Assembly: GCA_965235115.1 (NCBI GenBank)
Contig: OZ249439.1
Coordinates: 8,122,001 to 8,186,000, forward strand
From: Laetmonice hystrix
Taxonomy: Eukaryota
Reading direction: 5' to 3'
DNA: 64,000 nucleotides
Part shown: one piece after another, positions 1,066 through 24,292 of the stretch
Position numbering within the stretch: the first letter of the stretch is position 1
How the letters are laid out: each line of letters begins with the position of its first letter
Position numbers and translations under genes: made by a program
The notes under the pieces: model-generated
Seen by the model: the letters and a program-made list of their open reading frames with translations, nothing else
Told to the model about the DNA's origin: nothing
The model's database searches: none

Positions 1066-2147
1066 TGTAATATGGGACACTGTTAATTATCACTGTAATA
1101 TGGGACAGTAACCTTAACTATGACGTGTGGGACATTGATAAATATCACTGTAATATGGGACAGTAACCTTAACTATGACGTGTGGGACACTGTTAATTAT
1201 CACTGTAATATGGGACAGTAACCTTAACTATGACGTGTGGGACATTGATAAATATCACTGTAATATGGGACAGTAACCTTAACTATGACGTGTGGGACAT
1301 TGATAAATATCACTGTAATATGGGACAGTAACCTTAACTATGACGTGTGGGACATTGATAAATATCACTGTAATATGGGACAGTAACCTTAACTATGACG
1401 TGTGGGACATTGATAAATATCACTGTAATATGGGACAGTAACCTTAACTATGACGTGTGGGACATTGATAAATATCACTGTAATATGGGACAGTAACCTT
1501 AACTATGACGTGTGGGACATTGATAAATATCACTGTAATATGGGACAGTAACCTTAACTATGACGTGTGGGACATTGATAAATATCACTGTAATATGGGA
1601 CAGTAACCTTAACTATGACGTGTGGGACATTGATAAATATCACTGTAATATGGGACAGTAACCTTAACTATGACGTGTGGGACATTGATAAATATCACTG
1701 TAATATGGGACAGTAACCTTAACTATGACGTGTGGGACATTGATAAATATCACTGTAATATGGGACAGTAACCTTAACTATGACGTGTGGGACATTGATA
1801 AATATCACTGTAATATGGGACAGTAACCTTAACTATGACGTGTGGGACATTGATAAATATCACTGTAATATGGGACAGTAACCTTAACTATGACGTGTGG
1901 GACATTGATAAATATCACTGTAATATGGGACAGTAACCTTAACTATGACGTGTGGGACATTGATAAATATCACTGTAATATGGGACAGTAACCTTAACTA
2001 TGACGTGTGGGACATTGATAAATATCACTGTAATATGGGACAGTAACCTTAACTATGACGTGTGGGACATTGATAAATATCACTGTAATATGGGACAGTA
2101 ACCTTAACTATGACGTGTGGGACATTGATAAATATCACTGTAATATG
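1066..2147. repeat. 55-bp tandem satellite array, left part (about 19-20 copies), interrupted by the LTR element
   Basis: Unit cactgtaatatgggacagtaaccttaactatgacgtgtgggacattgataaatat recurs with period 55 (taata at 1261 and 1316); copies are near-identical. Confidence 0.97.
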
Positions 2148-2603
2148 TGTTAACATTTCTTTTGGTAGTTGGGAGAATAACTCAGTAGAGTCGTCGCTTG
2201 AGTTTTGAAGCTTTAATTCCTGAGGTACACGGTTGTCTTCTTCGACCAATATGCACCACGCGGTCAGTATATATATTCGTTATCTTCGTCAGTCTCTATC
2301 TCTCCTTCTCTTCTTCAGCATGTCTCCCCTCCTTTAAGGGGGTTTCCGTCATAGTCTAATGGACGGACACCGATCATTGGCCGGTGACCTACGACCAATT
2401 AGCTGGTCGCCCCCTGACTGACTCCTTTGATTGACAGCTACCGCCCTGATGGCTGTCATAGGTATGACGGGCTTGTTCAGTGGTGCATAACGGTCGAAGC
2501 TGAGACAACAATACAGTGCCATACAATGAATGGTATACCACGAGAAAACACACGCTAGGACTACTCTACAACAGGTTACATGGATACAAATGATATCTTA
2601 TCA
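2148..2603 (-). repeat. 3' LTR (456 bp)
   Basis: Plus strand tgttaac...cttatca; no difference from 13504-13959 found by eye; imperfect terminal inverted repeat TGATAA/TTAACA; ATTAAA on the minus strand at 2212-2217 is a candidate poly(A) signal. Confidence 0.98.
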
Positions 2604-2612
2604 TCCTCCCCT
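2604..2612 (-). promoter_or_regulatory. Polypurine tract (PPT)
   Basis: Minus-strand AGGGGAGGA directly abuts the 3' LTR. Confidence 0.85.
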
Positions 2613-3631
2613 GCTTTAATTTACAAACCATCCACTGGTTGTCTTTATAAAATAAGGTATTAGATAACATATATATTATGAAATATCATACAGAAATATA
2701 TATATCGCTTGACAGCTTGCAGTTATTGTTCTCCACCAGGTTATCTTTTCCAAGGTAAAATAACCAAAACCTTTGTTAGTTTCTCTCGTTAAAATAAAAC
2801 TGGGTTATGCAACTCCTTATAAAAGCTCGTATATAAAACTATGGAATCAAATATAATTATCATACCGATACCATAACACAGGGTTCAAACATCATGCGGG
2901 ACGCACCCACTAATTGCGACTTTACGCAAGTAATATTACACATCTACACTATTCAAACTATTTCAAATTTGAACAAAGAACTAAATCCATTACGTCCACT
3001 GAAAGTATGAGCTGGTTCCTCAACCTATATTACAATTAAAATGTTCAGAAATTTGTACCACCTATAATACTCTAGGCTTCTCCAAATCAGAGACGGAAAT
3101 AATCTCGTTTCAACTTTATAACATACACCGCTCATAGTTAATAAACATAGTACATAAAAACGTTCACTTTAAACACAATTTCCTGGAATCACGTGATTAC
3201 ATTTAACTCGTAATGTTATAAATCTGATCCCTAAGTAGTTTCCACCACCCTATATGACATAAAGCATAAACAATATAACGACTACCTTTCTTGAAACTAC
3301 ATTTTTGCGACTATAGTGTTGAGATCATCTGTCCAAACAAACGGGAAACATAACGTCGAAAAAGGTGCATCAACAAATGTCTATGACGTCAGTCTGGGAG
3401 ACGTAAGGACCGCGCTCAGGGGTCCGGTAACGGGTATCCTCCTTAGTCTCGTAGGCGTCGGTGGTGTTCGGGAAAGTCCACGCCAAGTACCTGTCCAAGT
3501 GAACAAAACATGCAGCCACTCAAAGGACAAGGAGCAACACAGCCTAGATTTCCCTATTTTTATGAGACAAGTGGATCTGTGGTTGACGTAGCGACAAAAA
3601 AAATATCTAAGCCTTTCGTTTCCCACCTCCC

Positions 3632-3633
<2 letters not shown>

Positions 3634-3671
<38 letters not shown>
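3634..3671 (-). other. Templated A38 tract (minus strand), 10 nt after the env stop codon
   Basis: Run of 38 T on the plus strand; the minus strand reads CCA TAA AC GTAAGT TC A38 GTGGGAGGTGGGAAA. Confidence 0.9.
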
Positions 3672-3672
<1 letters not shown>

Positions 3673-3681
3673 AACTTACGT

Positions 3682-6258
3682 TTATGGGGTTTCCTCCTGC
3701 AACAATGGATACAATCCTTCCTGATGTTCAGGGACTACTTTCTCATTTTCTCCATCGGTTTGTTTGTCCTTGATGCTGCGCAGGCAGGTTATTGCCCTAT
3801 TCCTCTTTACGACGATTTCCTGACCAAAGGTAGCATTTTTACTTTTTTTCAACAGCAAATCTAGCTGTCGTCCATACCAGCGGGACACGTGGATAGATAT
3901 TTCCATTTTTGTTTCCGTCTCCTCACCGTGGACCACTAGCCTGACGCTGTCATCGGCTCTAATATTGATATAGCTTGACAGCCACTTATGTTCTGCCCAA
4001 ATTTCAAAATTGGACGGGACGAAAATATAGTCAACGTCCTTTTGGAGATGATACAGCTTCATCAGGGGAAAAACCATAACTTTGTCGGGAGTTCCCAATC
4101 TGATGAAAAGTTCGGTCTGGTTCTTTAATTCGTCTGGTACATGCCAGTGTGTGTCAAGGTCCGCAAAGGGTATTGCCACTTTTCTCGCAATGAAATTGAC
4201 AAGTCTTTTAACACAAAGAAACAAACGTTTTAGTGACAGGATGACCAACAATGTCACAACACAAACCAAAAGTATTTCGATCAGTGTGAAAGAATATACT
4301 TTCTCAACGGGCGACGCTGCGGTACTAACGATCGCCTGCTTGGGGAAAGATTTGAGCAAGATTGGCTCAGGTTCCGACATCGCCTCAGCAGTTTGGTACA
4401 TTGATACTAAAATAAGGATTTGCCTGTATTTATAAAAGGCAAATATTCCTGGCAAACACATAATAAAGCCAATAATGACTAAAATGACGGTGGCAGTGCT
4501 TACCGCAGGAAGATTCGACCAATGGCCTATCTGCGACTTCTTAGGCTCATATTCGCGGATCATAGACGCCAAATTATTTAGCGATAATCCGACATGTCCG
4601 ATTTCTTTAATGTAATGGTGGTTTGTATAAGAAGAGTTATCAGTCAAGATTTTGAACTTTTGAGTCAAGAGTGAAGTGTTGTCAAAATCAACACTTATGT
4701 TAAATGTTTTCAACACGGGAATGTTTATTACATTCGTCGGCTCAACCATAGTTACCATGCACTCTGTCGACATGCCTCTTAGAAGGCGTCCCCTCAGCGA
4801 GGCCTGACAATGACAGGGAAGAGTCAAAAGACAGAGTGAGCACGACCTATAAGTTTGAGACCTGCCATCTCCACATAACACAGACATTTGTTGCTCTGGA
4901 GAGGAGACTAAATATCGGGAGTTTCCTAATCCTATAACAACGTCTGGAATCAATTGAGTGGGATGTGCAATAAAATGGCACAACTTCAGTGTTTCATCAA
5001 TTTTGTTTTGATAAAGTGCCCATTCGCAAGTTGAATACTTATTAAAATATCTCAGGAGAGGATTCTTACATGTGACTAAGATGTTTCTGGTACATGTAGA
5101 CATGTCTTCCTCCCGTAGCAGGACATAATGTGTCCCTCTGACGGATACTCCTATGTATCTGTTATTAATAGATATTACGGAATAACCTTTGCCATTATTT
5201 TGGTCCAGTGGCACGGGAAAGGTGCCGATTTGAAACAAATTGAAGTGAGAATCAGCCTGGACCAATGGTACTCGCAGATGTACATATAAACGTCGATGTG
5301 TGTACTGGAAATACGCCAGGTGATTGTTATAAAAAAAACTAAGGTCACCTGTTGCCAAGTCATAACCCTTGTCTAACTGTTCTTTTACTGTAAGTAAAAT
5401 GTCCTTTAAATCAGAAGGTTGTACTATGTCAGAAGTCAATATGCCGACCCGCAGCTGTTCGAACCCCCTCACAAAATCCACAACCTTTTGGTTATATTCA
5501 TTAATTAACAAAATCCTTGCCTGTATAATGGTCACATATGAGGTTAAATAAACTTGCCAGAGTCGAGCCATTGAGTCGTTTTTGTTACGCCGATTCAAAT
5601 CTAATAACATTTTTTCCGTCAAATGTCTGAATTTGGTATTGACCACATCCTGAGTTAGAAATCTTCCTTGAATGAGCGACAAGGCGTGTGCTGTGTCGTT
5701 TATAAAAACCAACGTTTGGTTTTCTAGGAAGGATACTTTCTGCTGAGTCTCTGCCATGACGTCCGCAAGAGCATTCAAATTTTGCTCTATGGGCCGAATG
5801 TCCGTTACCAAGGCTACTCCAAAAAGATTCCTCTGGAGGGAACCTACAAAGCCAAATGGTACCATTCGTCTTTTCCTGGCTTCGGTCTCGGAAACAGGAA
5901 ATTGAAACAGGTCATTTAAAACGTTGTGTGATTTCTGGACCCGTTGGAGTGAATTATAATAAGTCTGATTTAGCTTGTTAAGATATCCCTGGACACCTTG
6001 ACACAATTCAGGGAAGTACGGAGTGGGTGCCAGTTTTGATAGACGGACCCCACACGGTGATATAGGCATTCGTTTAGTCAGGTTCTGTACCTTTGGTCTG
6101 GAAATAGTCAAGACTAACTCCCTGAACTCCGAAGTTTCAACATAAACTTCTGGGAGTTTTTGGAATGTAACGCCATAATGTTCTCTTGAGAGAATACGGG
6201 CGTCGGCATTGTACACCACAAGAGTCAGCAGTATGCCTATCCACCGAAAACAAGCTCT
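3682..6258 (-). CDS. env: Envelope/fusion glycoprotein of the baculovirus-F/errantivirus-Env type, main exon (858 aa) with a C-terminal extension
   Basis: Signal-peptide h-region RACFRWIGILLTLVVYNADA; furin site RKRR (5866-5877) followed by fusion-peptide-like MVPFGFVGSLQRNLFGVA; heptad-like helices; Cys pattern CTRNILVTC..CEW..LCHF..CSLC..PCHC; N-glycosylation sequons; TM1 about 4432-4494, TM2 about 4231-4290. Confidence 0.92.
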   Translation of the reverse strand, partial: RACFRWIGILLTLVVYNADARILSREHYGVTFQKLPEVYVETSEFRELVLTISRPKVQNLTKRMPISPCGVRLSKLAPTPYFPELCQGVQGYLNKLNQTYYNSLQRVQKSHNVLNDLFQFPVSETEARKRRMVPFGFVGSLQRNLFGVALVTDIRPIEQNLNALADVMAETQQKVSFLENQTLVFINDTAHALSLIQGRFLTQDVVNTKFRHLTEKMLLDLNRRNKNDSMARLWQVYLTSYVTIIQARILLINEYNQKVVDFVRGFEQLRVGILTSDIVQPSDLKDILLTVKEQLDKGYDLATGDLSFFYNNHLAYFQYTHRRLYVHLRVPLVQADSHFNLFQIGTFPVPLDQNNGKGYSVISINNRYIGVSVRGTHYVLLREEDMSTCTRNILVTCKNPLLRYFNKYSTCEWALYQNKIDETLKLCHFIAHPTQLIPDVVIGLGNSRYLVSSPEQQMSVLCGDGRSQTYRSCSLCLLTLPCHCQASLRGRLLRGMSTECMVTMVEPTNVINIPVLKTFNISVDFDNTSLLTQKFKILTDNSSYTNHHYIKEIGHVGLSLNNLASMIREYEPKKSQIGHWSNLPAVSTATVILVIIGFIMCLPGIFAFYKYRQILILVSMYQTAEAMSEPEPILLKSFPKQAIVSTAASPVEKVYSFTLIEILLVCVVTLLVILSLKRLFLCVKRLVNFIARKVAIPFADLDTHWHVPDELKNQTELFIRLGTPDKVMVFPLMKLYHLQKDVDYIFVPSNFEIWAEHKWLSSYINIRADDSVRLVVHGEETETKMEISIHVSRWYGRQLDLLLKKSKNATFGQEIVVKRNRAITCLRSIKDKQTDGENEKVVPEHQEGLYPLLQEETP

Positions 6259-6421
6259 CTGCAAACATAAAGAAGTGACAATATGCCGTAAACCTATAAT
6301 ACGTGAAGATTCATGGTCCTTTTGGAGCCACCTAAGAACAACATCAGTTGTTCAAATTCCAAGAGTGTTACTGAATATACTTGTAATTTTTAAAATGTAA
6401 CTGTGCGATTTAACAACTTAC
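6259..6421 (-). other. Predicted 163-nt spliceosomal intron in env
   Basis: Minus strand gccATG|GTAAGT ... tcacttctttatgtttgcAG|AGA GCT TGT. Splicing is phase 0 and places ATG in front of the signal peptide, which otherwise has no in-frame ATG. Confidence 0.8.
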
Positions 6422-6460
6422 CATGGCTGTTGCTTTCTTCCAATCGCTATTAGCTTCCAT
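6422..6460 (-). CDS. env: Predicted env initiation exon (MEANSDWKKATAM, or only the last ATG)
   Basis: Two in-frame ATGs (6460 and 6424) in good Kozak context (agcATGG, gccATGG), the second ending exactly at the GTAAGT donor. Confidence 0.7.
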
Positions 6461-7139
6461 GCTATCAAAACCAAAGTAGATCTATGGACCACGCTGCACA
6501 GCCGTGTATCCTGATCTCATGTGGAATCCTTATAGGACTCTTTCACATACATGTGTATAACTCTCTGAGGTGAGGGGTCTACTGAGTATCCGGAGACCTG
6601 GGACCGGTTCACCAAGATCTCCAACTCAAACTTTTGACTCCACCCACCCAGAAGATACTAATGAATATTCATGAATAGCATGTTACCAACGCCTACTTTG
6701 CAGGGCTATCACGTGTCTGACTCTGCCTAGAGTCCAAAGTGGACTCTAAATATACAATGAATACCAGATATAATTAAACACCTGTTGCGGCCTCCGTCCC
6801 TCTTATGTTGAAGGCGGTCCGACAGGAACAAATAACAGGGTTACCCTATAATTGGCACCCCTTGATACAGACCATACTACGAGTCTGGTGGCATTTCACA
6901 CCCAGGTATACAACTGTAGTACCTGCCGTCTTTGTCGAACAGTAAAGCAACATCATTCTATTGCAGTCATGTAACCATCTTGTCTCTCTAACTAGCAGAC
7001 AAAGGTGGGTGATACAACAAAGGTTCAATTACGGGCTGCGGTCAAGCGGCTTATTTCCGACCACCCCTTTGTTGACCGGCCGTAAAGTCGCGGTGGTAAT
7101 GCAACCATGTGTTGTTTCTGCTATCAGCCGCTGTAGCGA

Positions 7140-7376
7140 CTATCCATTCACACCATATGTAAAGTAACATGTGGGAATGACTAAGCTTTGAAGTTTATGT
7201 GGCTTTACTTCAAGTGAATGTTTATCGCCGTGTAATCCCTCAATATAAATGCGGGAATAGACATGGTGGTTTGTGTAATGGTTAGTACCCCTTTGGCCGG
7301 AATCTAAAAACAATCCCAACGGTGGCAATTTCCTAGGTTTATTGCTATTCACACGAATCATCTGAGGGGTTTCCAT
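7140..7376 (-). CDS. Possible 78-aa accessory ORF between pol and env
   Basis: ATG in gtaATGG context about 45 nt downstream of a strong acceptor (tttcttcctgcttttcccCAG, AG at 7419-7420); no recognisable motif. Confidence 0.3.
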   Translation of the reverse strand: METPQMIRVNSNKPRKLPPLGLFLDSGQRGTNHYTNHHVYSRIYIEGLHGDKHSLEVKPHKLQSLVIPTCYFTYGVNG

Positions 7377-7531
7377 TACCACTAGGACATTACTCGAGGC
7401 AAACTCTTAACTGAAATACTGGGGAAAAGCAGGAAGAAATGATTTCGTTATATTACTTCCCACGGGTTAAAAATTGAAATCAAAAAGAGCTAAAGTTTAG
7501 AAAAATAAATCTACCCCTTATATGGTTAACT

Positions 7532-10500
7532 TTAATCGAGTTTTCTCAAATTTCTATTGCGTAGGTTATACCTTAGCTCTGGTACATCTAAATCTCCGTC
7601 AATATATTTGCACCTTGCCTCTTTATTTAGGAATGATTCTGGGACCCAGACATTATCACCGTCTTGATAACTCACTAGGACGATAAGTTCGCCATTCCTC
7701 TTGTTGAGTTTATCAATCGCCTTTATTGGGAAAAAAGGACCTGTGCCGGCTTTCTTTGCTTTGGGTACCTTCTGGTCATCAGAATCTATTGCCTCATCTT
7801 CACTCAGTGCATCTGACTCCTCAGCTTCAATTTCGCCGTCAGAATAAACTGACTCTGCATCATCATCAATTTCATCTTCTTGAACCGGATCTGAGATAAA
7901 ACTATCGTCAGGGAAATCGCATTCCTCGAGCTCAGCAGGATCCTCATATTCCACCTCGAACTCGGGCCACCTTTCCTGTAGTTCTTCTCGATTTAGGCTC
8001 TTCTTTAGTCTATGAGTTGTGACAGGTTTGGTCATGAATTTTCCGGTCGTGGTGTGTTTCAACCACACCGTACTGTCGGTATGAAACGCTACTATAACGT
8101 AGGGACCATGGAAAATTTTAGCCAACTTCAGTTTTGTTGTCTGATCATTTAGTCTGGGCCAAAACAACCACACCCTATCGCCTTCACTTAGTTTGGGGTC
8201 ATGAACGTGTTTGTCATACCGAAGCTTCATGTTCTTTTGAGTTTCCTTAAAGGTCACTCGAGACTTTTCATGAGCATTTTTCTGGGTTTGGAGTACTTCA
8301 GCAAACCGGTCCTGAACCGTGCCATCTCCGCCCAGATCAAGCTTCACATTGGTTTCTATGGGGTTTAGTGGGTCGTATCCGTGGCAAAGTAGAAAAGGTG
8401 TTACCCCCAACGAGTACGCCTCCGTGGTGTTCAGAGCAAACAGTACCTCTGGAATACTTTCGTCCCAGTTATTCTGTTTTTCATTCACAAAAGTTCTTAA
8501 CACGTTTAATACTGACCTGTTTGCCCTTTCTACTAAACCACTAGTTTGCGGATGAGCAACTGTTGAAAAAGACTGAGTGATATTATACCGTTCACACATT
8601 ATCTTAAATTCCTCTCCCACAAAGCATTTTCCATTATCGCTTATAATTCTCCGTACCCCTCCGACTCTACAAATGACATTGGCAAAGAATCTCTCTGCCA
8701 CTGACTTAGCCGTGAGGTTAGGCAACGGAAAGGCAATGGTATATCTCGAGTAGTAGTCCACAACTACTATCAGGTGTCTGTTACCTTTCCTTGATCGTGG
8801 GAGCCTTTCTAACGCATCAATGTTAACGATATGCCAAGGCCTAGGACTAGGATCCCTCAGTGTGAGCGGCGGCCGAATAGGATGAGTCATCCGTTTGGTT
8901 TGAGCGCACACATCACATGAGTTACAATATCTGTGAATATCTTGACACATGCCAAACCAGAAATACTTTGTCCTCATAGCGCTAAGCATCTTTTGGGAAC
9001 TCAGATGAGCGCCAATCAGTGAGTCGTGATGCACCTCCAAGATCACTTTCCTTAGATTCCTTGGGATAACCAACCTCGCATGTGTCTCTGCTTTAGGACC
9101 CAATGTCGTATGGATGTTATACAGAATATCATCACTGATTATGAAATTCTCCTCCAAGATCGTCACCCTTTTTGCTCTGGCCTCATCCTCGGGGAGTTCT
9201 TTGTCCTTTAAGAATTTGATTAAATCTGAGCTAAATTCATCCCTCACCTGTGCATCTCTAACACACTGTGCTGATAAACCTAGTCCTTCAAATGTTAATC
9301 TATACTGAGTTTGCAAAATATCAGAATATTTCAGTCGCTTACGGTTGTTTGGGGACTTTTTGTTTGATCTCTGGGATGAACTGACCTCGTCTGCCTTGAC
9401 TTGACCCAGACTGTTTATGGGCAGTTCCTCGACTTTCGGCAAATCTAGCTCTTTGGGATCCTGGTACAGATCGTTGATGACGCCCATTATTTGGGTTCTG
9501 TCTGCAATTGCGCTTGCATCTGTGATCTGACTTAACTCAAGGCATCTTTCAATGAACTCCTCAACTCCCGGTGAGATGACCTCTACTTTATCTTGCTCTT
9601 CTGGTCTTGAAAGCGCATCGGCGACAACATTGCTCTTACCTTTTATATGTTCAATCTCGAACTGGAATTGATTTAGGAAAGCTCGCCATTTGCTTTGCCT
9701 CAAGGTGAACTTGCCAGAATCTCCCAAGATATATTTCAGAGCTGAATGGTCAGTCCTTATTTTGAATTTCCTGCCAGTTAAATACACTTTCCAGTACTCG
9801 ACTGAGTAACATATTCCCAGTAGTTCCTTGTCAAGTGTACTGTACCTGTTTTGACTTTCCCCAAACTTTTTACTTAGGAAAGCTACTGGGCGTTCCCTAT
9901 TGTCCTGATCGAGCTGACTAAGGCAGCCACCGATTCCAACTCCAGACCCGTCAGTGGTCAAAATGAATTCCTTTTGGAAATCGGGATACATCAAAACAGT
10001 ATCTGACGTCAAGGTATCTCGAAGTGTCTCAAAAGCCTTCTGATGTGTTTCTGTCCATTCCCATTTACTTTCACCTTTTGTTAGACCATACAAAGGATTA
10101 GCAAGTTTGCCATACTTTGGAATAAAGCGGCGATAAAATCCGGTGATTCCCAAAAATCGCCTCAACCCTTTGACATTTGTAGGGGGCTGTAAACCTTGAA
10201 TCACCTCAATCTTCTGTGGGTTAGGTTTAATGCCAAACTCTCCGATAACATGGCCTAGGAATAGAGCTTCTTGACACGCTATCTTAGTCTTGCTGGGCTT
10301 CAGTTTAAGCCCTGCGCCAATCAACCTTTGCAGCACCTCTTCCACACCTGCCAAATGTTCTTCCCATGTTCTGGATGGAATAATTATATCGTCAACATAA
10401 ATTAGGATGCTTTCAAAGGGTATACCCCTCATGATCATATCGATCAACATTTGGCAAGATCGTGGGGCATTTTTCATACCCATTGGGAGAACCTTATACC

Positions 10501-10816
10501 TGTACTTACCCATTGGTGTTATGAAGGCGGTTTTGTCTCTATCAGACTCTTTAATGGGGATTTGGTGAAATGCGCTTTGAAGATCGCACACGGTTATGAA
10601 CTTTGGTTTGATTGTACCCACAGCGTCAATAGTATCCTCCACGCGTGGGACGTTGAGGAATTGATCTATTGTTTCCCTATTCAAGCCGCGATAATCACAA
10701 ACCAACCTATCGCCCCCATCGCTCTTTTTGACCAAGAACGCGGGACTTGCCCATGGTCCACTGTTCGTTTCCTCAATTATCCCTAATTCTAATTGATCTT
10801 CGACACACCTTTCCAT
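7532..10816 (-). CDS. pol: Pol C-terminal part: reverse transcriptase, RNase H, integrase, acidic linker, chromo-like domain
   Basis: RT motifs PWASPAFLVKK, DLQSAFHQIP, YVDDII; RNase H TDGSGVGIG, ELLGI, TDHSAL, ADALSR; integrase HHCC (H..H..CDVC), D-D-E (IDAL, SDNG, GLVER) and GPY; C-terminal DNVWVPESFL. Confidence 0.97.
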   Translation of the reverse strand: MERCVEDQLELGIIEETNSGPWASPAFLVKKSDGGDRLVCDYRGLNRETIDQFLNVPRVEDTIDAVGTIKPKFITVCDLQSAFHQIPIKESDRDKTAFITPMGKYRYKVLPMGMKNAPRSCQMLIDMIMRGIPFESILIYVDDIIIPSRTWEEHLAGVEEVLQRLIGAGLKLKPSKTKIACQEALFLGHVIGEFGIKPNPQKIEVIQGLQPPTNVKGLRRFLGITGFYRRFIPKYGKLANPLYGLTKGESKWEWTETHQKAFETLRDTLTSDTVLMYPDFQKEFILTTDGSGVGIGGCLSQLDQDNRERPVAFLSKKFGESQNRYSTLDKELLGICYSVEYWKVYLTGRKFKIRTDHSALKYILGDSGKFTLRQSKWRAFLNQFQFEIEHIKGKSNVVADALSRPEEQDKVEVISPGVEEFIERCLELSQITDASAIADRTQIMGVINDLYQDPKELDLPKVEELPINSLGQVKADEVSSSQRSNKKSPNNRKRLKYSDILQTQYRLTFEGLGLSAQCVRDAQVRDEFSSDLIKFLKDKELPEDEARAKRVTILEENFIISDDILYNIHTTLGPKAETHARLVIPRNLRKVILEVHHDSLIGAHLSSQKMLSAMRTKYFWFGMCQDIHRYCNSCDVCAQTKRMTHPIRPPLTLRDPSPRPWHIVNIDALERLPRSRKGNRHLIVVVDYYSRYTIAFPLPNLTAKSVAERFFANVICRVGGVRRIISDNGKCFVGEEFKIMCERYNITQSFSTVAHPQTSGLVERANRSVLNVLRTFVNEKQNNWDESIPEVLFALNTTEAYSLGVTPFLLCHGYDPLNPIETNVKLDLGGDGTVQDRFAEVLQTQKNAHEKSRVTFKETQKNMKLRYDKHVHDPKLSEGDRVWLFWPRLNDQTTKLKLAKIFHGPYVIVAFHTDSTVWLKHTTTGKFMTKPVTTHRLKKSLNREELQERWPEFEVEYEDPAELEECDFPDDSFISDPVQEDEIDDDAESVYSDGEIEAEESDALSEDEAIDSDDQKVPKAKKAGTGPFFPIKAIDKLNKRNGELIVLVSYQDGDNVWVPESFLNKEARCKYIDGDLDVPELRYNLRNRNLRKLD

Positions 10817-11960
10817 TCTCTTTTTGCTTCTGGTGCCATCCTGTATGGTAATTTCTGAGTATTCTTTGGATGCGCCACCAGCTGTATTTCGTGTTCATAC
10901 AAATGTGTTAAGCCTAATTTCCCGTCAGGGCCCACAAATGCTTGGTTGTTTCTTTTTAATACTTCATTCATCTGTTGCTTTTGATCCTCAGTGATATTTG
11001 CCCCAGAGAAATCTACATTTGGGAGGAAATCTTCTCCCGATTCTACCTTGGGTTTGCTAGTGGCTGAGAATACCGTAGGCTTTTCCCTACCAATCCTTTG
11101 TGTATGCAGGTTGCCAGGCTCATTTGCTCTAACTACATTTATACAGGGTGTTAACTCCATCTCTGCCAAATAACCTAAATTAGACCCTGCCGTCAACGTT
11201 CGAGCATATGGGTTCGTATTCAGCAGTCTGAGATAAACGGTATTATCCTTAACTCTGACCAGTCCTTTCATGGCCAAGATTTTAAGTCTTTTCATGCTTC
11301 CTGAGGTAGTTACTACTCCTTCCCAGCCCTCTAGGTTTTGATCTGAGACCAACTCACCCTTTGTCCAGATCTCACTGTGGGGTGGCATCACTATTGTACG
11401 TGTCAGTTTGATATCAGGGGGTCCATGGATTTTGGGTCTTTTTCTGTTAAAATTTATTGTCATTCCATGATCTCTAAGGAAATCGTTACCCAGGATGACC
11501 TCCGTGGTCAAATATGGCAATACTAGGAAATTTTGCGTGTACTCGGATTCCTTTAGTCGTACCTTTAGGGTTAATTCGCTATCTGCAGAGACAGTTTCGC
11601 CTCCTGCAAACGTGCAATGCATGGTTGTCGGGAGTAGGGTGTGGGGAATATTTCTTTCAACAACCTCATTAAAAATGTCTCTACTAACCACAGATCTTGT
11701 AGCCCCTGTGTCAATTAAGGCTGTGTAACCCCCACCACCAATGAATAGCTGAACGCAGTTGTCCTCAGACAAGATACAATTATGTGGACTTTCCTTACCT
11801 GACCAGTGTTGCTGATGCCCAGTCTTTTGCGGTGAATTCAGGATGCTGTTGTCATTGATCTTGTCTGGACTTGTCTGCACTTGGGGTTTATCGTCAGCAT
11901 TTTGTTTTGGATTTTGTGGAACATTCCACTCCCCCGCAGGAATGTTCCGGTCTAGTTTTC
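10789..11960 (-). CDS. pol: Pol N-terminal part: aspartic protease plus degenerate dUTPase-like domain
   Basis: LIDTGATRSVV (DTG at 11704-11712) and VILGNDFL. The frame is open from the gag slippery site (GKLDRNIPAGEW...QVQTSP). It ends in RT-entry sequence HEIQL..PYRMAPEAKRE and is one base out of frame with the RT ORF. Confidence 0.95.
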
Positions 11961-11961
11961 C
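11918..11961 (-). promoter_or_regulatory. -1 ribosomal frameshift signal at the gag-pol junction
   Basis: G GAA AAC directly before the gag TAG, 6-nt spacer, then a perfect 10-bp stem GGAACATTCC/GGAATGTTCC with an 11-nt loop; the -1 frame is the protease frame. Confidence 0.85.
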
Positions 11962-13445
11962 TGAAACTTAACCAAGAGTGACTTCATCTGCTCCATCATG
12001 GTCTTCATTTCTCCAATCTCTGAAGATGTTGTGTTGGCCAGTGGTTCTGGTGGTGTTACCGTGTTACCAGGAATGGCCTGCATGCTATTTTGAGCGGACT
12101 GTCCGGCAAACTGGTCTCTCCCTTGCATTCTTGTGGTTCTCTGGTATGGGCGTTGATTCCCTTCCGCAAAGTAGCAGTCCTTCTTTTCGTGATTGTTTCT
12201 GCCACATATATCGCACTTTTGGACTTTTCTTTGGGCCCACTCCTTCTGTTGTCCCCAAGATTTAGCTGACGGCTTTCCCTGAGAATTTTGGCCTACCGCG
12301 TTGGGGTGTCTTCCGTTTCTGGTGCGATCCTGATTGAAGTGACTGTGTTGGTAGTGAACTGCACCTTTTGCACCTTGGTTTGAGGACTTCTCCTCCCTAT
12401 TCTTCTCTTTCCTTTGATGTTCTTCTTCCCACTTTGATCTTTTTTCAAGATCAGCGACAGTATGTTTCACCAGGTCAATGCTTGGGAGGGTTTCCCTGAC
12501 CTTTTCTGTTGCCATCTCATACGTCTCGATATCATTATTATGTATGGCGTTCCTGTATTCAGGCAAGACATTGAGTTTAAAAATTATGAACTTCTGTTCA
12601 TTGGACAGCCTAAGGCGTTTTGCCATGCATTCGAACCGACAGATGAATTCTTCCTGTGTTTCTGTCCGTTTCATGTCATTGAGGATCTCTGTGCGCCACT
12701 CCTCACTATTAACGCCAGTGAAACGTTTTAGGAAACGGCGCCTGAAGTCGTCATACCCCTTGAATTCGTGGTCAACATTCGTGTACCACACCAATGCCTG
12801 CTCGTCCAAAAATGACCACATCGTGTTCATCACTTGCCCCTTCCAGTCACTGCCAGACGCATCATACAGATATGTGTGATACGCCTCCATCTTGGAGATC
12901 CAAGTTAGAGGGTCTTCTTTATCTGTTCCCCTAAACGGTTTCGGCGCCTTGACATCAGGACTGATGTTTGGCCTTTTCTCGACGTTTCTCATCTCGTTAT
13001 GTCGAACCATGAATTCCAGCATCTGCTCTTGCTGCCTTTCAGTTTGCTGAACCTGCATACGCATGAATTGTTCCGTTTGCTCCTGCCATATACGCAACAG
13101 CGAACTCACCTGCTGACTGGTTGTATCTTTTGCCGCTGTTTGAGGGTTTTCTTTCTCTCTATTTTGTTGGGGAATTTCTGGCCCTTGGTTTCGTTGTACC
13201 AACACAACCTCAGCGTCTTCCCCTGGCGGATCCATTGTGCGTGATACTAAGGAATGTCTGGTATCTACCTTTACTGTTGTTTTGCCTTCCAGCTGATACA
13301 GGTCGGGCTGGTGTCTCCGTAAGCTGCGCGCTGGTCCAGTTGGCTTGATACTCTTTTCCGCCGAATTTGCGCCTCTTACGGTGGTAAAACTGTCCGATTC
13401 GTCCTCGGATGAGTCAGCAAGTCTGATTCCTCGATGACTTGACAT
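11952..13445 (-). CDS. gag: Gag (497 aa) with capsid region and one CCHC zinc knuckle
   Basis: PKPFRGTDKEDPLTWISKME capsid-start motif; CDICGRNNHEKKDC (12174-12215); Q-rich helical N-terminal region; position immediately after the PBS. Confidence 0.95.
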   Translation of the reverse strand: MSSHRGIRLADSSEDESDSFTTVRGANSAEKSIKPTGPARSLRRHQPDLYQLEGKTTVKVDTRHSLVSRTMDPPGEDAEVVLVQRNQGPEIPQQNREKENPQTAAKDTTSQQVSSLLRIWQEQTEQFMRMQVQQTERQQEQMLEFMVRHNEMRNVEKRPNISPDVKAPKPFRGTDKEDPLTWISKMEAYHTYLYDASGSDWKGQVMNTMWSFLDEQALVWYTNVDHEFKGYDDFRRRFLKRFTGVNSEEWRTEILNDMKRTETQEEFICRFECMAKRLRLSNEQKFIIFKLNVLPEYRNAIHNNDIETYEMATEKVRETLPSIDLVKHTVADLEKRSKWEEEHQRKEKNREEKSSNQGAKGAVHYQHSHFNQDRTRNGRHPNAVGQNSQGKPSAKSWGQQKEWAQRKVQKCDICGRNNHEKKDCYFAEGNQRPYQRTTRMQGRDQFAGQSAQNSMQAIPGNTVTPPEPLANTTSSEIGEMKTMMEQMKSLLVKFQEN

Positions 13446-13483
13446 GTAAGGTTACTAACTCTGCCGCATGATGAGCTGATCGA

Positions 13484-13498
13484 CCGGGTTCTCCTCCA
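13484..13498 (-). promoter_or_regulatory. Primer-binding-site candidate
   Basis: Minus-strand TGGAGGAGAACCCGG begins 5 nt after the 5' LTR; TGG is complementary to tRNA CCA. The primer tRNA is not established. Confidence 0.6.
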
Positions 13499-13503
13499 CT
13501 TTA

Positions 13504-13959
13504 TGTTAACATTTCTTTTGGTAGTTGGGAGAATAACTCAGTAGAGTCGTCGCTTGAGTTTTGAAGCTTTAATTCCTGAGGTACACGGTTGTCTTCTTCG
13601 ACCAATATGCACCACGCGGTCAGTATATATATTCGTTATCTTCGTCAGTCTCTATCTCTCCTTCTCTTCTTCAGCATGTCTCCCCTCCTTTAAGGGGGTT
13701 TCCGTCATAGTCTAATGGACGGACACCGATCATTGGCCGGTGACCTACGACCAATTAGCTGGTCGCCCCCTGACTGACTCCTTTGATTGACAGCTACCGC
13801 CCTGATGGCTGTCATAGGTATGACGGGCTTGTTCAGTGGTGCATAACGGTCGAAGCTGAGACAACAATACAGTGCCATACAATGAATGGTATACCACGAG
13901 AAAACACACGCTAGGACTACTCTACAACAGGTTACATGGATACAAATGATATCTTATCA
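13504..13959 (-). repeat. 5' LTR (456 bp) with TATA-like box
   Basis: Copy of 2148-2603; TATATATA-type run at 13624-13632, upstream (in minus orientation) of ATTAAA at 13568-13573. Confidence 0.98.
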
Positions 13960-14240
13960 TATGGGACAGTAACCTTAACTATGACGTGTGGGACATTGAT
14001 AAATTTCACTGTAATATGGGACAGTAACCTTAACTATGACGTGTGGGACATTGATAAATATCACTGTAATATCTTAGCTATATAACGGTCACTGTAATAT
14101 GGGACAGTAGCTTTGGTGAAAGTAACGTTTACTAATAACAATATGGGACTGCAGCTAGTGATTCTGACGTTTACTGATAACAATCGATGTAGTATGGGAC
14201 AGTAACGCTGTAATGTGGGACACTGTAATGACGTTAACTA
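13960..14240. repeat. 55-bp satellite, right part (about 2 intact units, then degenerate)
   Basis: Resumes in register (tatgggacagtaacc...) exactly after the LTR end and decays after about 14071. Confidence 0.9.
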
Positions 14241-14519
14241 TTGACGTGTTCCACTGTATCCTGTGGCGCCGCCTACCGGAAGATGATGAATGTCCATGAT
14301 TAATCTTCATTATCCGGCTCGCGGTAAGCAGCGGGATGAGGTGGAATGTGTGTGTGTGATTTGAACTGTGGGCCACAACCCCATCCTCATTGTAGCCACC
14401 GATGAAACACACGCCATGAACATCACTAAGCACGCGTCCCTTTCCGAGCGACTATAAAATCCGTCTTTTTTTGGCTCTGATGAAGATGGCATCCTGAGAA
14501 GACAATTAAGCGGAACTTG

Positions 14520-15356
14520 CAGTAAGGAGATTGGAGACTGTATGTGGACCTGTACGTATGGCGACAGCCGCAGGTACAGGGAACTCTCAGTAAGGAGATT
14601 GGAGACTGTATGTAGACCTGTACGTATGGCGACAGCCGCAGGTACAGGAAACTCTCAGTAAGGAGATTGGAGACTGTATGTAGACCTGTACGTATGGCGA
14701 CAGCCGCAGGTACAGGGAACTCTCAGTAAGGAGATTGGAGACTGTATGTAGACCTGTACGTATGGCGACAGCCGCAGGTACAGGAAACTCTCAGTAAGGA
14801 GACTGGAGACGGTATGTAGACCTGTACGTATGGCGACAGCCGCAGGTACAGGGAACTCTCAGTAAGGAGACTGGAGACTGTATGTAGACATGTACGTATA
14901 GCGACAGCCGCAGGTACAGGGAACTCTCAGTAAGGAGATTGGAGACTGTATGTAGACCTGTACGTATGGCGACAGCCGCAGGTACAGGGAACTCTCAGTA
15001 AGGAGATTGGAGACTGTATGTAGACCTGTACGTATGGCGACAGCCGCAGGTACAGGGAACTCTCAGTAAGGAGACTGGAGACTGTACCTGTAGTACGTAT
15101 GGCGACAGCCGCAGGAATTGTTAATGTACAGGGAACTCTCAGTAAGGAGACTGGAGACTGTATGTAGACCTGTACGTATGGCGACAGCCGCAGGTACAGG
15201 GAACTCTCAGTAAGGAGACTGGAGACTGTATGTGGACCTGTACGTATGGCGACAGCCGCAGGAATTGTTAATGTACAGGGAATTCTCAGTAAGGAGACGA
15301 GAGACTGTATGTAGACCTGTACGTATGGCGACAGCCGCAGGAATTGTTAATGTACA
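14520..15356. repeat. 68-bp minisatellite (about 12 copies)
   Basis: cagtaaggagattggagactgtatgtagacctgtacgtatggcgacagccgcaggtacagggaactct; unit starts at 14520 and 14588. Confidence 0.95.
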
Positions 15357-23463: not shown

Positions 23464-24292
23464 CGTCCAGCCAGACCTGGGCAGGCCCGACCACCGTCCA
23501 GCCAGACCTGGGCAGGCCCGACCACCGTCCAGCCAGACCTGGGCAGGCCCGACCACCGTCCAGCCAGACCTGGGCAGGCCCGACCACCGTCCAGCCAGAC
23601 CTGGGCAGGCCCGACCACCGTCCAGCCAGGCCTGGGCAGGCCCGACCACCGTCCAGCCAGGCCTAGGCAGGCCCCACCACCGTCCAGCCAGGCCTAGGCA
23701 GGCCCGACCACCGTCCAGCCAGACCTGGGCAGGCCCGACCACCGTCCAGCCAGACCTAGGCAGGCCCGACCACCGTCCAGCCAGACCTGGGCAGGCCCGA
23801 CCACCGTCCAGCCAGGCCTAGGCAGGCCCGACCACCGTCCAGCCAGACCTGGGCAGGCCCGACCACCGTCCAGCCAGACCTGGCCAGGCCCGACCACCGT
23901 CCAGCCAGACCTGGGCAGGCCCCACCACCGTCCAGCCAGACCTGGCCAGGCCCGACCACCGTCCAGCCAGACCTGGGCAGGCCCGACCACCGTCCAGCCA
24001 GACCTGGGCAGGCCCGACCACCGTCCAGCCAGACCTGGGCAGGCCCCACCACCGTCCAGCCAGGCCTGGGTAGGCCCCACCACCGTCCAGCCAGGCCTGG
24101 GCAGGCCCGACCACCGTCCAGCCCGACCAGGACAGGCCCGAGCCACCCGACCACCGTCCAGCCCGACCAGGACAGGCCCGAGCCACCCGACCACCGTCCT
24201 ACCAGGCCGAGACTGACCCCACCACCGTCTTGCCCGACCAGGGCAGGCCCGAGCCACCCGACCACCGTCAAGCCAGGACCGACCCGAGCCAC
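23464..24292. repeat. 31-bp GC-rich minisatellite, degenerating rightwards
   Basis: cgtccagccagacctgggcaggcccgaccac; period 31. Confidence 0.95.

What the first reader, a model, noticed from the sequence alone, without database searches (positions are those of the whole stretch)
2148..13959. Complete, very young env-bearing Gypsy element: a candidate invertebrate endogenous retrovirus
Seen: apparently identical 456-bp LTRs, an intact TATG target duplication, gag, pol, and an uninterrupted env ORF with signal peptide, RKRR site and a G..G.L...LFG fusion peptide. Established: this env pattern is that of baculovirus F and errantivirus Env, and 4-bp YRYR-type duplications are typical of errantiviruses. 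Inference: the family is currently or recently active and may make infectious particles. I do not know an element that combines an intron-split env, a two-TM env extension, a pseudo-dUTPase and a chromo-like integrase tail.
Basis: partly seen in the sequence, partly recalled or inferred. Interest (0 to 1): 0.9.

Follow-up and report, generated by a model that had tools for sequence, protein, structure and literature searches.

The report
Young env-carrying gypsy-type endogenous retrovirus
This is a freshly inserted, full-length retrovirus-like mobile element with a paramyxovirus/baculovirus-type fusion envelope gene; it belongs to a kind recently shown to be common in invertebrates, so it is a good specimen with some undescribed details, not a new kind of thing.

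Summary
Window 2148-13959 (minus strand, 11,812 bp) is one LTR element with two 456-bp LTRs identical at every base and TG..CA ends. It has a TATG duplication, and the empty site can be read from the 55-bp satellite it sits in. It encodes gag (CCHC), pol (PR, a dUTPase-fold domain, RT, RNase H, IN, an acidic tract and a conserved tail) and an 860-codon env. Env reaches Pfam Baculo_F, and its AlphaFold model matches pneumo/paramyxovirus F (probability 1.0).

Two corrections:
- Pol is read in two frames. Three relatives read it in one, and no recoding signal is present, so this copy has one probable frameshift or an assembly indel.
- Env has no in-frame ATG. Its start codon sits on a mini-exon (ATG|GTAAGT), 163 nt upstream of a conserved acceptor. 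Two relatives share this arrangement.

New details:
- A conserved gag/pol -1 frameshift cassette.
- A family-wide second hydrophobic segment in Env, plus a confidently folded C-terminal domain with no PDB match.

Novelty is limited. F-type env Ty3/gypsy elements, some with chromodomains, were surveyed across Metazoa (eLife 2026). dUTPase plus F-like env is known in rotifer TelKA. Verdict: a new member of a known kind. Recent integration is supported; infectivity is untested.

The parts
2148..13959 (-). whole LTR element, 11,812 bp
   Evidence: LTR pair, target duplication, gag-pol-env order
13504..13959 (-). 5' LTR, 456 bp, TG..CA
   Evidence: identical to the 3' LTR at every base; TATA-like and ATTAAA motifs seen by eye (inference)
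2148..2603 (-). 3' LTR, 456 bp
2144..2147 (.). target-site duplication TATG, left copy
   Evidence: the satellite unit gives the empty site
13960..13963 (.). target-site duplication TATG, right copy
13482..13498 (-). primer-binding-site-like stretch starting TGG, 5 nt after the LTR
   Evidence: about 30 nt conserved with L004; primer tRNA not identified
11952..13445 (-). gag, 497 codons, CCHC knuckle at 12174-12215
   Evidence: Ty3_capsid 4e-5, below the Pfam cut-off; knuckle
11918..11961 (-). gag/pol -1 frameshift cassette: heptamer GGAAAAC, stop codon, then hairpin 11918-11948
   Evidence: same layout in L004, L001 and L002; hairpin -17.1 kcal/mol, z -2.6
7532..11967 (-). pol, given as one part: PR 11425-11724, dUTPase-fold domain 11101-11430, RT (Pfam match) 10244-10732, RNase H 9665-10057, IN zinc finger 8894-9067, IN core 8549-8842, acidic tract 7757-7936, conserved tail 7535-7759. 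One frame change beyond the gag/pol shift.
6425..7531 (-). pol-env spacer, 1.1 kb, no long ORF; acceptor-like site with exon start at 7418
   Evidence: relatives have spacers of 0.7-1.4 kb with no sequence similarity; acceptor scan
6422..6460 (-). env mini-exon ending in ATG (6422-6424), with a second in-frame ATG 12 codons upstream
   Evidence: ATGGTAAGT occurs once in the 64 kb window; phase-0 donor scan; shared with L085, and similar in L004
6259..6421 (-). predicted env intron, 163 nt, GTAAGT ... pyrimidine tract + CAG
   Evidence: acceptor aligns in the window, L085 and L004
3682..6258 (-). env main exon: furin-type site 5866-5877, fusion-peptide-like stretch 5797-5865, hydrophobic segment 1 at 4435-4491, segment 2 at 4231-4287, C-terminal beta domain 3775-4134
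   Evidence: Baculo_F 2.6e-13; model pLDDT 77.8; F matches; conservation counts; C-terminal model
3634..3671 (-). A38 run 10 nt after the env stop
   Evidence: absent in relatives
2604..2617 (-). polypurine tract abutting the 3' LTR
   Evidence: read from the sequence; L004 has a similar GGGGAG-containing tract
1073..2147 (.). host 55-bp satellite array, the insertion target; it continues at 13960-14072

Best explanation
A recently integrated, full-length copy of a Ty3/gypsy (Metaviridae) endogenous retrovirus that carries an F-type class I fusion envelope gene. It is of the kind called 'ancient errantiviruses'.

Proposed working:
- The 5' LTR drives a full-length RNA.
- gag is translated to its stop. 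A conserved -1 slip at an A-AAC site, stimulated by a hairpin just after the stop, gives Gag-Pol.
- Pol supplies protease, an apparently non-catalytic dUTPase-fold domain, RT, RNase H and integrase. The integrase carries an acidic tract and a conserved C-terminal module.
- env is expressed from a spliced RNA. Its start codon lies on a mini-exon and is joined in phase to the signal peptide through a 163-nt intron.
- Env would be cut at RKRR to expose a fusion peptide, and would act as a trimeric class I fusogen.
- Integration makes a 4-bp duplication.

Shown: anatomy, homology, fold, and conservation of the signals.
Inferred: frameshifting, splicing, cleavage and fusion.

This copy needs one extra frame change in pol. 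It is therefore probably defective on its own, or mis-assembled at one base.
For: - LTR identity, duplication and empty site.
- Domains and catalytic motifs.
- Env: Baculo_F above the Pfam cut-off. There are 1114 relatives, mostly 800-950 aa. The basic P1 residue is kept in 76 of 76 and 12 Cys are conserved. Foldseek gives RSV, hMPV and PIV3 F at E 3e-9, probability 1.0, with 241 PDB matches at E<=0.001. Baculovirus F and chu-related glycoproteins are hit in BFVD.
- Related full elements with the same gag, pol, spacer, env layout: L002, L004, L085. 4-bp duplications in L004 and L001.
- Frameshift cassette in four elements.
- Env splice signals shared by the window, L085 and L004.
- Literature: PMC13524379, PMC5408684, PMC4276936.
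Against: - There are no expression data, so splicing and frameshifting are predictions.
- pol needs a frame change that relatives lack and that has no recoding signal.
- No other copy lies in the window, and no near-identical protein is in the databases. Family copy number and activity are therefore unknown.
- The host is unidentified.
- The primer tRNA was not found.
- The distant relatives L002 and L003 have an ordinary env ATG.
Confidence: 0.85

Rival explanations
1. The copy is dead on arrival or non-autonomous. The extra frame change in pol is a real mutation made in the last replication cycle or carried by a lineage that is copied in trans by intact siblings.
For: PR and RT are in one frame in L001, L002 and L004 but in two in the window. 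There is no canonical slippery heptamer, no long homopolymer and only a weak following fold (-3.7 against a background of -7.4, sd 3.4 kcal/mol).
Against: All catalytic motifs and all other frames are intact, and the LTRs are identical. A single-base assembly error would look the same.
Confidence: 0.45
2. The pol frame change is a sequencing or assembly indel, and the real copy is fully open.
For: It is a single frame change with homology running on across it. The window is satellite-rich, which suggests a long-read assembly.
Against: There is no homopolymer of 6 or more in the overlap of the two frames. Nothing else in the element looks like an indel error.
Confidence: 0.3
3. The second frame change is a programmed -1 frameshift, as in gag-pro-pol retroviruses.
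For: It has the same direction (-1) as the gag/pol shift, and the frames overlap by 106 nt.
Against: It falls inside conserved RT sequence instead of at a domain border. It is absent in three relatives. No slippery heptamer or stimulatory structure is present.
Confidence: 0.1
4. env is no longer expressed. The lack of an in-frame ATG is a defect, and the upstream ATG|GTAAGT is a coincidence.
For: L002, L003 and L004 have in-frame ATGs at the signal peptide. No tool here predicts splice sites.
Against: ATGGTAAGT occurs once in 128 kb of searched strand and lies 163 nt upstream, in phase. L085 has ATG|GTGAGT 372 nt upstream of the same acceptor and also lacks an in-frame ATG. L004 has a four-codon ATG exon ending |GTAAGA. 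The acceptor aligns in all three, although the spacers otherwise do not align. The 860-codon frame has no stop.
Confidence: 0.15
5. The identical LTRs reflect gene conversion or assembly collapse, not a recent insertion.
For: Zero differences in 456 bp only bounds divergence at about 0.0066 per site or less (95%). Without a host mutation rate, that could still mean up to a few million years.
Against: The duplication is intact, every ORF but one junction is open, and relatives L004 and L001 also have identical LTRs, as expected for active families.
Confidence: 0.05

Closest known systems
'Ancient errantiviruses': F-type env-carrying Ty3/gypsy elements of non-insect Metazoa (Chary & Hayashi, eLife 2026, PMC13524379), especially the chromodomain-bearing clade of Cnidaria, Mollusca and Annelida
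   Same: gag-pol-env order. F-type ENV with a furin site, a fusion peptide and a structured ectodomain resembling paramyxo/pneumovirus F. Identical LTRs are taken as a sign of recent expansion. There is an extra module after integrase.
   Different: Placement in their POL tree could not be tested, because no reference sequences were at hand. The tail does not reach the Pfam Chromo model. That paper's main text has no occurrence of 'splic' or 'dUTPase' and mentions introns only in its reference list, and it analysed only the ectodomain. The pol-env gap here (1.1 kb) exceeds the 1000 nt their first filter allowed.
TelKA (with Juno and Vesta) LTR retrotransposons of bdelloid rotifers (Rodriguez, Kenefick & Arkhipova 2017, PMC5408684)
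   Same: A dUTPase domain between PR and RT. TelKA has a paramyxovirus-F-like env with RXXR, a fusion peptide, conserved cysteines and a TM anchor. It also has a gag CCHC knuckle and near-identical LTRs.
   Different: The authors found no chromodomain in those lineages. Here the dUTPase-fold domain is much more divergent and seems to lack the catalytic Asp. No sequence comparison with TelKA was possible.
Drosophila gypsy and ZAM (genus Errantivirus)
   Same: A -1 gag/pol frameshift, env from a spliced RNA, Env related to baculovirus F, and a 4-bp target duplication (PMC4276936; the duplication size is from my own knowledge).
   Different: Env here is about 860 residues and has a second hydrophobic segment and a folded C-terminal domain. 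There is a dUTPase-fold domain and a 1.1-kb pol-env spacer. The nearest Pol relatives are unnamed, and no Drosophila element is among the best hits.
Baculovirus F (Ld130 family) and pneumo/paramyxovirus F
   Same: Pfam Baculo_F over residues 88-604. Foldseek probability 1.0 to baculovirus F and to RSV, hMPV and PIV F. Furin site followed by a fusion peptide.
   Different: 10-17% identity. The best BFVD matches are instead glycoproteins of chu-related viruses and an uncharacterised Abalone herpesvirus protein. The C-terminal 270 residues have no counterpart in the Pfam model.

Membership tests
Ty3/gypsy (Metaviridae) LTR retrotransposon | LTRs with TG..CA ends flanked by a short target duplication | tested here: met
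   456-bp identical LTRs, TATG duplication
Ty3/gypsy (Metaviridae) LTR retrotransposon | pol domain order PR-RT-RNase H-IN, with the Ty3/gypsy-type RNase H and H2C2 integrase models | tested here: met
   RVP, RVT_1, RT_RNaseH_2 6.8e-34, Integrase_H2C2 6.9e-18 and rve, in that order
Ty3/gypsy (Metaviridae) LTR retrotransposon | RT/IN phylogenetic placement among reference Ty3/gypsy clades | not tested
   No named reference sequences were available. The best hits are unnamed Ty3/gypsy-type Pol proteins at 45% identity over the full length.
Errantivirus, in the operational sense of env-carrying Ty3/gypsy | third ORF after pol encoding a viral-type fusion glycoprotein | tested here: met
   Baculo_F 2.6e-13 (cut-off 24.1 bits, score 49.9); F-protein fold matches
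Errantivirus, in the operational sense of env-carrying Ty3/gypsy | env expressed from a spliced RNA | tested here: inconclusive
   Donor and acceptor signals are conserved in three elements. No transcript data.
Errantivirus, ICTV genus (insect gypsy group) | membership of the insect gypsy RT clade; duplicated 'pseudo' RNase H in the bridge region (PMC13524379) | not tested
Chromodomain-bearing errantivirus clade / chromoviruses | chromodomain C-terminal to integrase | tested here: inconclusive
   No Pfam Chromo hit at E<=1; Chromo_shadow 0.2. The PDB profile gives cpSRP43 chromodomain 0.34 and PHF19 Tudor about 1. hhalign against P0092 falls inside its Pfam Chromo domain at E 0.12. The module is conserved in the window, L004, L001 and L003.
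Class I F-type fusogen (baculovirus F / paramyxovirus F) | multibasic cleavage site directly followed by a hydrophobic fusion peptide | tested here: met
   RKRR at 130-133. P1 is basic in 76 of 76 relatives and P4 in 70 of 76. The following stretch is 70% apolar or Gly.
Class I F-type fusogen (baculovirus F / paramyxovirus F) | F-like ectodomain fold | tested here: met
   Model pLDDT above 90 over residues 230-500. RSV, hMPV and PIV3 F at probability 1.0, but TM-scores of only 0.2-0.44.
Class I F-type fusogen (baculovirus F / paramyxovirus F) | membrane fusion activity, trimer formation | not testable with these tools
   Needs experiment.
dUTPase (trimeric dUTPase / dCTP deaminase superfamily) | detectable similarity to the beta-barrel fold | tested here: inconclusive
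   A 4-sequence profile hits 30 PDB sequences, all dUTPase or dCTP deaminase, best E 0.01, with about 80 residues in register. One relative hits Herpes_ORF11 dUTPase at 0.0075. The window sequence alone has no Pfam hit.
dUTPase (trimeric dUTPase / dCTP deaminase superfamily) | catalytic motifs, notably the motif-3 Asp | tested here: not met
   In the HMMER alignments the Asp-bearing motif of the enzymes faces non-Asp positions of the profile. This supports a 'pseudo' enzyme, although the alignment is weak.

The most novel reading that the evidence does not exclude
This sub-lineage of env-bearing Ty3/gypsy elements runs env as an intron-containing unit. The start codon sits on its own mini-exon. 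A further donor-like site sits at the env stop. Long, unconserved spacers on both sides may hold an internal promoter. Its Env carries an undescribed C-terminal module (a second membrane segment plus a folded beta domain). That module may be shared with glycoproteins of chu-related viruses and a mollusc herpesvirus, which would link retroelement Env to those virus groups instead of to baculoviruses.
Probability: 0.3. Interest if true: 0.55.

Novelty: new member of a known kind. Interest (0 to 1): 0.4.

Why it matters
It is a clean, dated example of a non-insect env-bearing retroelement, with the empty site visible. It adds testable details to a recently described class: how env gets its start codon, how gag-pol recoding is signalled, and an Env tail domain of unknown fold. 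The insertion lies in a satellite array and the integrase carries an extra tail, which fits, but does not prove, targeting to repeat-rich chromatin.

Tried and rejected
- Word-indexed protein searches with Env, alone and as an alignment, found nothing. The exhaustive search was needed.
- No names or hosts could be obtained for Env relatives or from sample accessions in the literature.
- Scans of JGI metagenomes and IMG/VR gave no close relative: Env none, Pol at most 40%. The Env alignment was too divergent for pattern scanning.
- The host could not be identified. The rest of the window is minisatellites, with no Pfam-supported host gene, no Rfam hit and no credible tRNA.
- The C-terminal Env domain has no PDB fold match at E<=0.001; the best is an intein Hint domain at 0.011. 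Iterated profile searches found it only in L004 and one fragment.
- A first alignment with the C-terminal fragment was smeared and was discarded.
- The pol-env spacers and the 3' regions share no sequence or ORF among four elements.
- A donor in the 5' leader is not conserved with L004.
- A strict scan found no acceptor downstream of env.
- RNAalifold on the MAFFT alignment of the frameshift region was uninformative, because the hairpins differ in sequence. Single-sequence folds were used instead.
- The paper's supplementary tables are not held.

Full report
OBSERVATION

The element occupies window 2148-13959 and is transcribed on the minus strand. The two LTRs (13504-13959 and 2148-2603) are 456 bp long, identical at every base, and start TG and end CA. 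TATG flanks both ends.

The element sits in a 55-bp satellite. There are 19.5 units on one side, and the array continues for 2.1 units on the other. The satellite unit contains TATG once, in exactly the flanking context, so the unoccupied site can be read off directly.

Zero differences in 456 sites put the 95% upper bound on LTR divergence at about 0.0066 per site. 'Very young' is therefore fair, but without a host mutation rate the bound in years is loose. No other copy or solo LTR is in the window.

GENES

- gag (13445-11952) has 497 codons, one CCHC knuckle, and a Ty3_capsid match below the Pfam cut-off.
- pol (11967-7532) holds a DTG protease, a YVDD reverse transcriptase, Ty3/gypsy-type RNase H, an H2C2 zinc finger and a D,D35E integrase core. 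After these come an acidic tract (37% Asp+Glu) and a conserved tail.
- env has an 889-codon open frame.
- A polypurine tract abuts the 3' LTR.
- A TGG-initiated stretch 5 nt after the 5' LTR is conserved with relative L004 over about 30 nt. I could not identify the primer tRNA.

RELATIVES

Nothing near-identical is in the 5.8-billion-protein collection.
- The best full-length Pol is 45% identical. Fragments reach 64-72%.
- Env has 1114 relatives in the exhaustive search, mostly 800-950 residues, the best at 27% identity. All come from unannotated ENA or Logan assemblies.

I fetched five related loci:
- L004: a 13,357-bp element with identical 470-bp LTRs and duplication ATAT. RT is 72%, IN 61% and Env 41% identical.
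- L085: IN 65%, Env 43%, with env in three pieces.
- L002 and L003: Pol 36-41%, Env 26%.
- L001: Pol 45%, no env, identical 1158-bp LTRs, duplication AATA.

The gag, pol, long spacer, env, long 3' region layout recurs. The 4-bp duplication is a family trait.

GAG/POL RECODING

In all four elements that have gag, pol is in the -1 frame. In all four, gag ends with A-AAC followed directly by the stop codon. The heptamers are GGAAAAC in the window and L004, AAAAAAC in L001 and CCCAAAC in L002.

A hairpin of -15 to -20 kcal/mol starts within 0-3 nt of the stop. In the window it is -17.1 kcal/mol with z -2.6, against -7.4 (sd 3.4) for 50-nt windows across pol. The stems differ in sequence between elements. 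I read this as a conserved programmed -1 frameshift cassette. That reading is inferred, not shown.

A FRAME CHANGE IN POL

Beyond that junction, pol in the window needs one more -1 frame change. It lies within conserved RT sequence. L001, L002 and L004 read PR through RT in a single frame.

The overlap of the two frames holds no canonical slippery heptamer and no homopolymer of six or more. The best fold after any relaxed slip site is -3.7 kcal/mol.

I count this as one frameshift-type break in pol. It is either real (a defective copy) or a one-base assembly error. A second programmed shift is unlikely. There are no stops inside any frame.

ENV IS AN F-TYPE FUSOGEN

- Pfam Baculo_F matches residues 88-604 at 2.6e-13, above the gathering score.
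- Across 76 aligned relatives, the P1 residue of the RKRR site is basic in 76 and P4 in 70.
- The next 23 positions are 59% apolar or Gly on average, and 70% here.
- Twelve cysteines are kept in 52-76 sequences each.
- An AlphaFold2 model (76-sequence alignment, mean pLDDT 77.8, above 90 over residues 230-500) has the long helices and beta-rich head of F.
- Foldseek against the PDB returns RSV, hMPV and PIV3 F in pre- and post-fusion forms. The best E is 2.7e-9, probability is 1.0, and 241 matches have E<=0.001. TM-scores are low (0.2-0.44), as expected between conformers.
- Against predicted viral structures, the best matches are glycoproteins of chu-related viruses (5e-28) and an uncharacterised Abalone herpesvirus protein (3e-22). 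Baculovirus F (about 1e-16) and paramyxovirus F (about 1e-7) rank lower. Under the rules I could not fetch those viral proteins to see which domains align.

ENV START AND INTRON

The env frame has no ATG before its signal peptide. The first in-frame ATG is 94 codons into the open frame.
- 163 nt upstream lies ATG directly followed by GTAAGT. This is the only ATGGTAAGT on either strand of the 64-kb window, where 0.62 were expected.
- A pyrimidine tract plus CAG abuts the first signal-peptide codon, in phase 0.
- L002 and L003 have an ordinary ATG.
- L085 lacks an in-frame ATG. It has ATG|GTGAGT 372 nt upstream of the same kind of acceptor.
- L004 has a four-codon ATG exon ending |GTAAGA, 433 nt upstream of that acceptor, besides in-frame ATGs after it.
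- The acceptor aligns in all three elements, although the spacers give no BLAST match at all.

The intron is thus shared by relatives. I did not write out a joined product.

Where the env transcript begins is open. No leader donor is conserved with L004. A strong acceptor-like site lies early in the spacer, with its exon starting at 7418. An internal promoter in the spacer is an equally possible reading.

ENV C-TERMINAL EXTENSION

After the hydrophobic segment that matches the end of the Baculo_F model (592-610), there is a second one (660-678) followed by a basic stretch, and then about 180 residues. Two such segments about 70 residues apart, plus a tail of 180-220 residues, occur in about 25 of 30 relatives examined. 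This is a family trait, not a peculiarity of this element.

Residues of about 711-830 fold as a beta-rich domain with pLDDT above 90 in two independent models. It has no PDB match at E<=0.001. Its sequence is recognisable only in L004 (46 of 141 residues identical) and one fragment.

Its topology is unresolved. If both segments span the membrane, the domain is external. However, the basic cluster after the second segment argues for a cytoplasmic side.

THE OTHER TWO CLAIMS

The 110 residues between PR and RT are conserved in L004, L001 and L002.
- A four-sequence profile retrieves 30 PDB sequences, every one a dUTPase or dCTP deaminase. The best E is 0.01, with about 80 residues in register.
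- The enzymes' Asp-bearing motif faces non-Asp positions.
- One relative touches Pfam Herpes_ORF11 dUTPase.
- 'Pseudo-dUTPase' is therefore plausible but weakly supported.

The pol tail is a conserved module of about 60 residues in the window, L004, L001 and L003.
- It does not reach Pfam Chromo.
- It gives only weak Royal-family hints: Chromo_shadow 0.2, a cpSRP43 chromodomain 0.34 and a PHF19 Tudor about 1. An hhalign match inside the Pfam Chromo domain of P0092 has E 0.12.

COMPARISON WITH WHAT IS KNOWN

- Chary and Hayashi (PMC13524379) catalogued 1512 env-carrying Ty3/gypsy elements across Metazoa. These have F-type or gB-type ENV, furin sites and fusion peptides, and mostly occur in multiple near-identical copies. 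One clade, from Cnidaria, Mollusca and Annelida, carries chromodomains.
- Rodriguez et al. (PMC5408684) described rotifer elements with a dUTPase between PR and RT, and TelKA with a paramyxovirus-F-like env.
- Drosophila gypsy uses a frameshift and a spliced env RNA (PMC4276936).

I did not find either of those described in the papers read.

VERDICT

This is a new member of a known kind. Recent integration is well supported. Autonomy of this copy is doubtful, and infectivity is untested.

1. While looking at the primer-binding site, I recalled some tRNA 3' ends from memory in my thinking.
2. Before I recognised that the second frame change in pol is probably a break, one search printed the bounds of the two pol frames and notebook entry 1 recorded them. 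In my thinking I also narrowed down where the change lies.
3. Alignment tools printed consensus lines on their own. I used none.

Noticed in passing
window 1-64000 outside 2148-13959: The rest of the window is a mosaic of unrelated minisatellite arrays: a 55-bp unit at 1073-2147, a 68-bp unit at 14512-15341, and repeat-derived ORFs near 23.7-24.3, 38.0-39.8, 44.4-47.0, 50.9-53.1, 59.6-60.8 and 61.9-63.5 kb. No host gene or Rfam hit was recognised. This is repeat-rich chromatin as an insertion site.
   Followed up: partly
window 3634-3671: A run of 38 A (element strand) lies 10 nt after the env stop codon. It is absent from four relatives, and its origin is unexplained.
   Followed up: partly
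window about 3672-3681; L085 5524-5532; L004 just before 18450: A donor-like GTRAGT sits at the env stop in three related elements. In the window and L085 it lies two nt after TAA. In L004 it lies 24 nt before the stop. No strong acceptor was found downstream.
   Followed up: partly
window 6425-7531 and 2604-3681; matching parts of L002, L003, L004, L085: Long AT-rich non-coding stretches lie between pol and env (0.7-1.4 kb) and between env and the 3' LTR (0.7-2.2 kb). They recur in every relative but share no sequence.
   Followed up: yes
L001 7324-17605: An env-less relative (Pol 45% identical) with identical 1158-bp LTRs and a 4-bp duplication comes from the same assembly (ERZ25767047) as the env-bearing L004. 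It keeps the frameshift cassette and the integrase tail module.
   Followed up: partly
Env model m7bc1da307328: In BFVD the closest predicted structures are glycoproteins of chu-related viruses and an uncharacterised Abalone herpesvirus protein, ahead of baculovirus F. PMC13524379 describes Chuviridae-like glycoproteins as gB-like, so these long chu-related proteins may be a different, F-like set.
   Followed up: no
window 24121-24210: ARAGORN calls a 90-nt tRNA-Pro inside a GC-rich repeat array. Rfam finds no tRNA there, so it is probably a false call.
   Followed up: partly
window 7418; L085 2734: Strong acceptor-like sites (a long pyrimidine tract plus CAG) lie early in the pol-env spacer. 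They are candidates for a long-range splice that would bring the ATG mini-exon into an env RNA.
   Followed up: no
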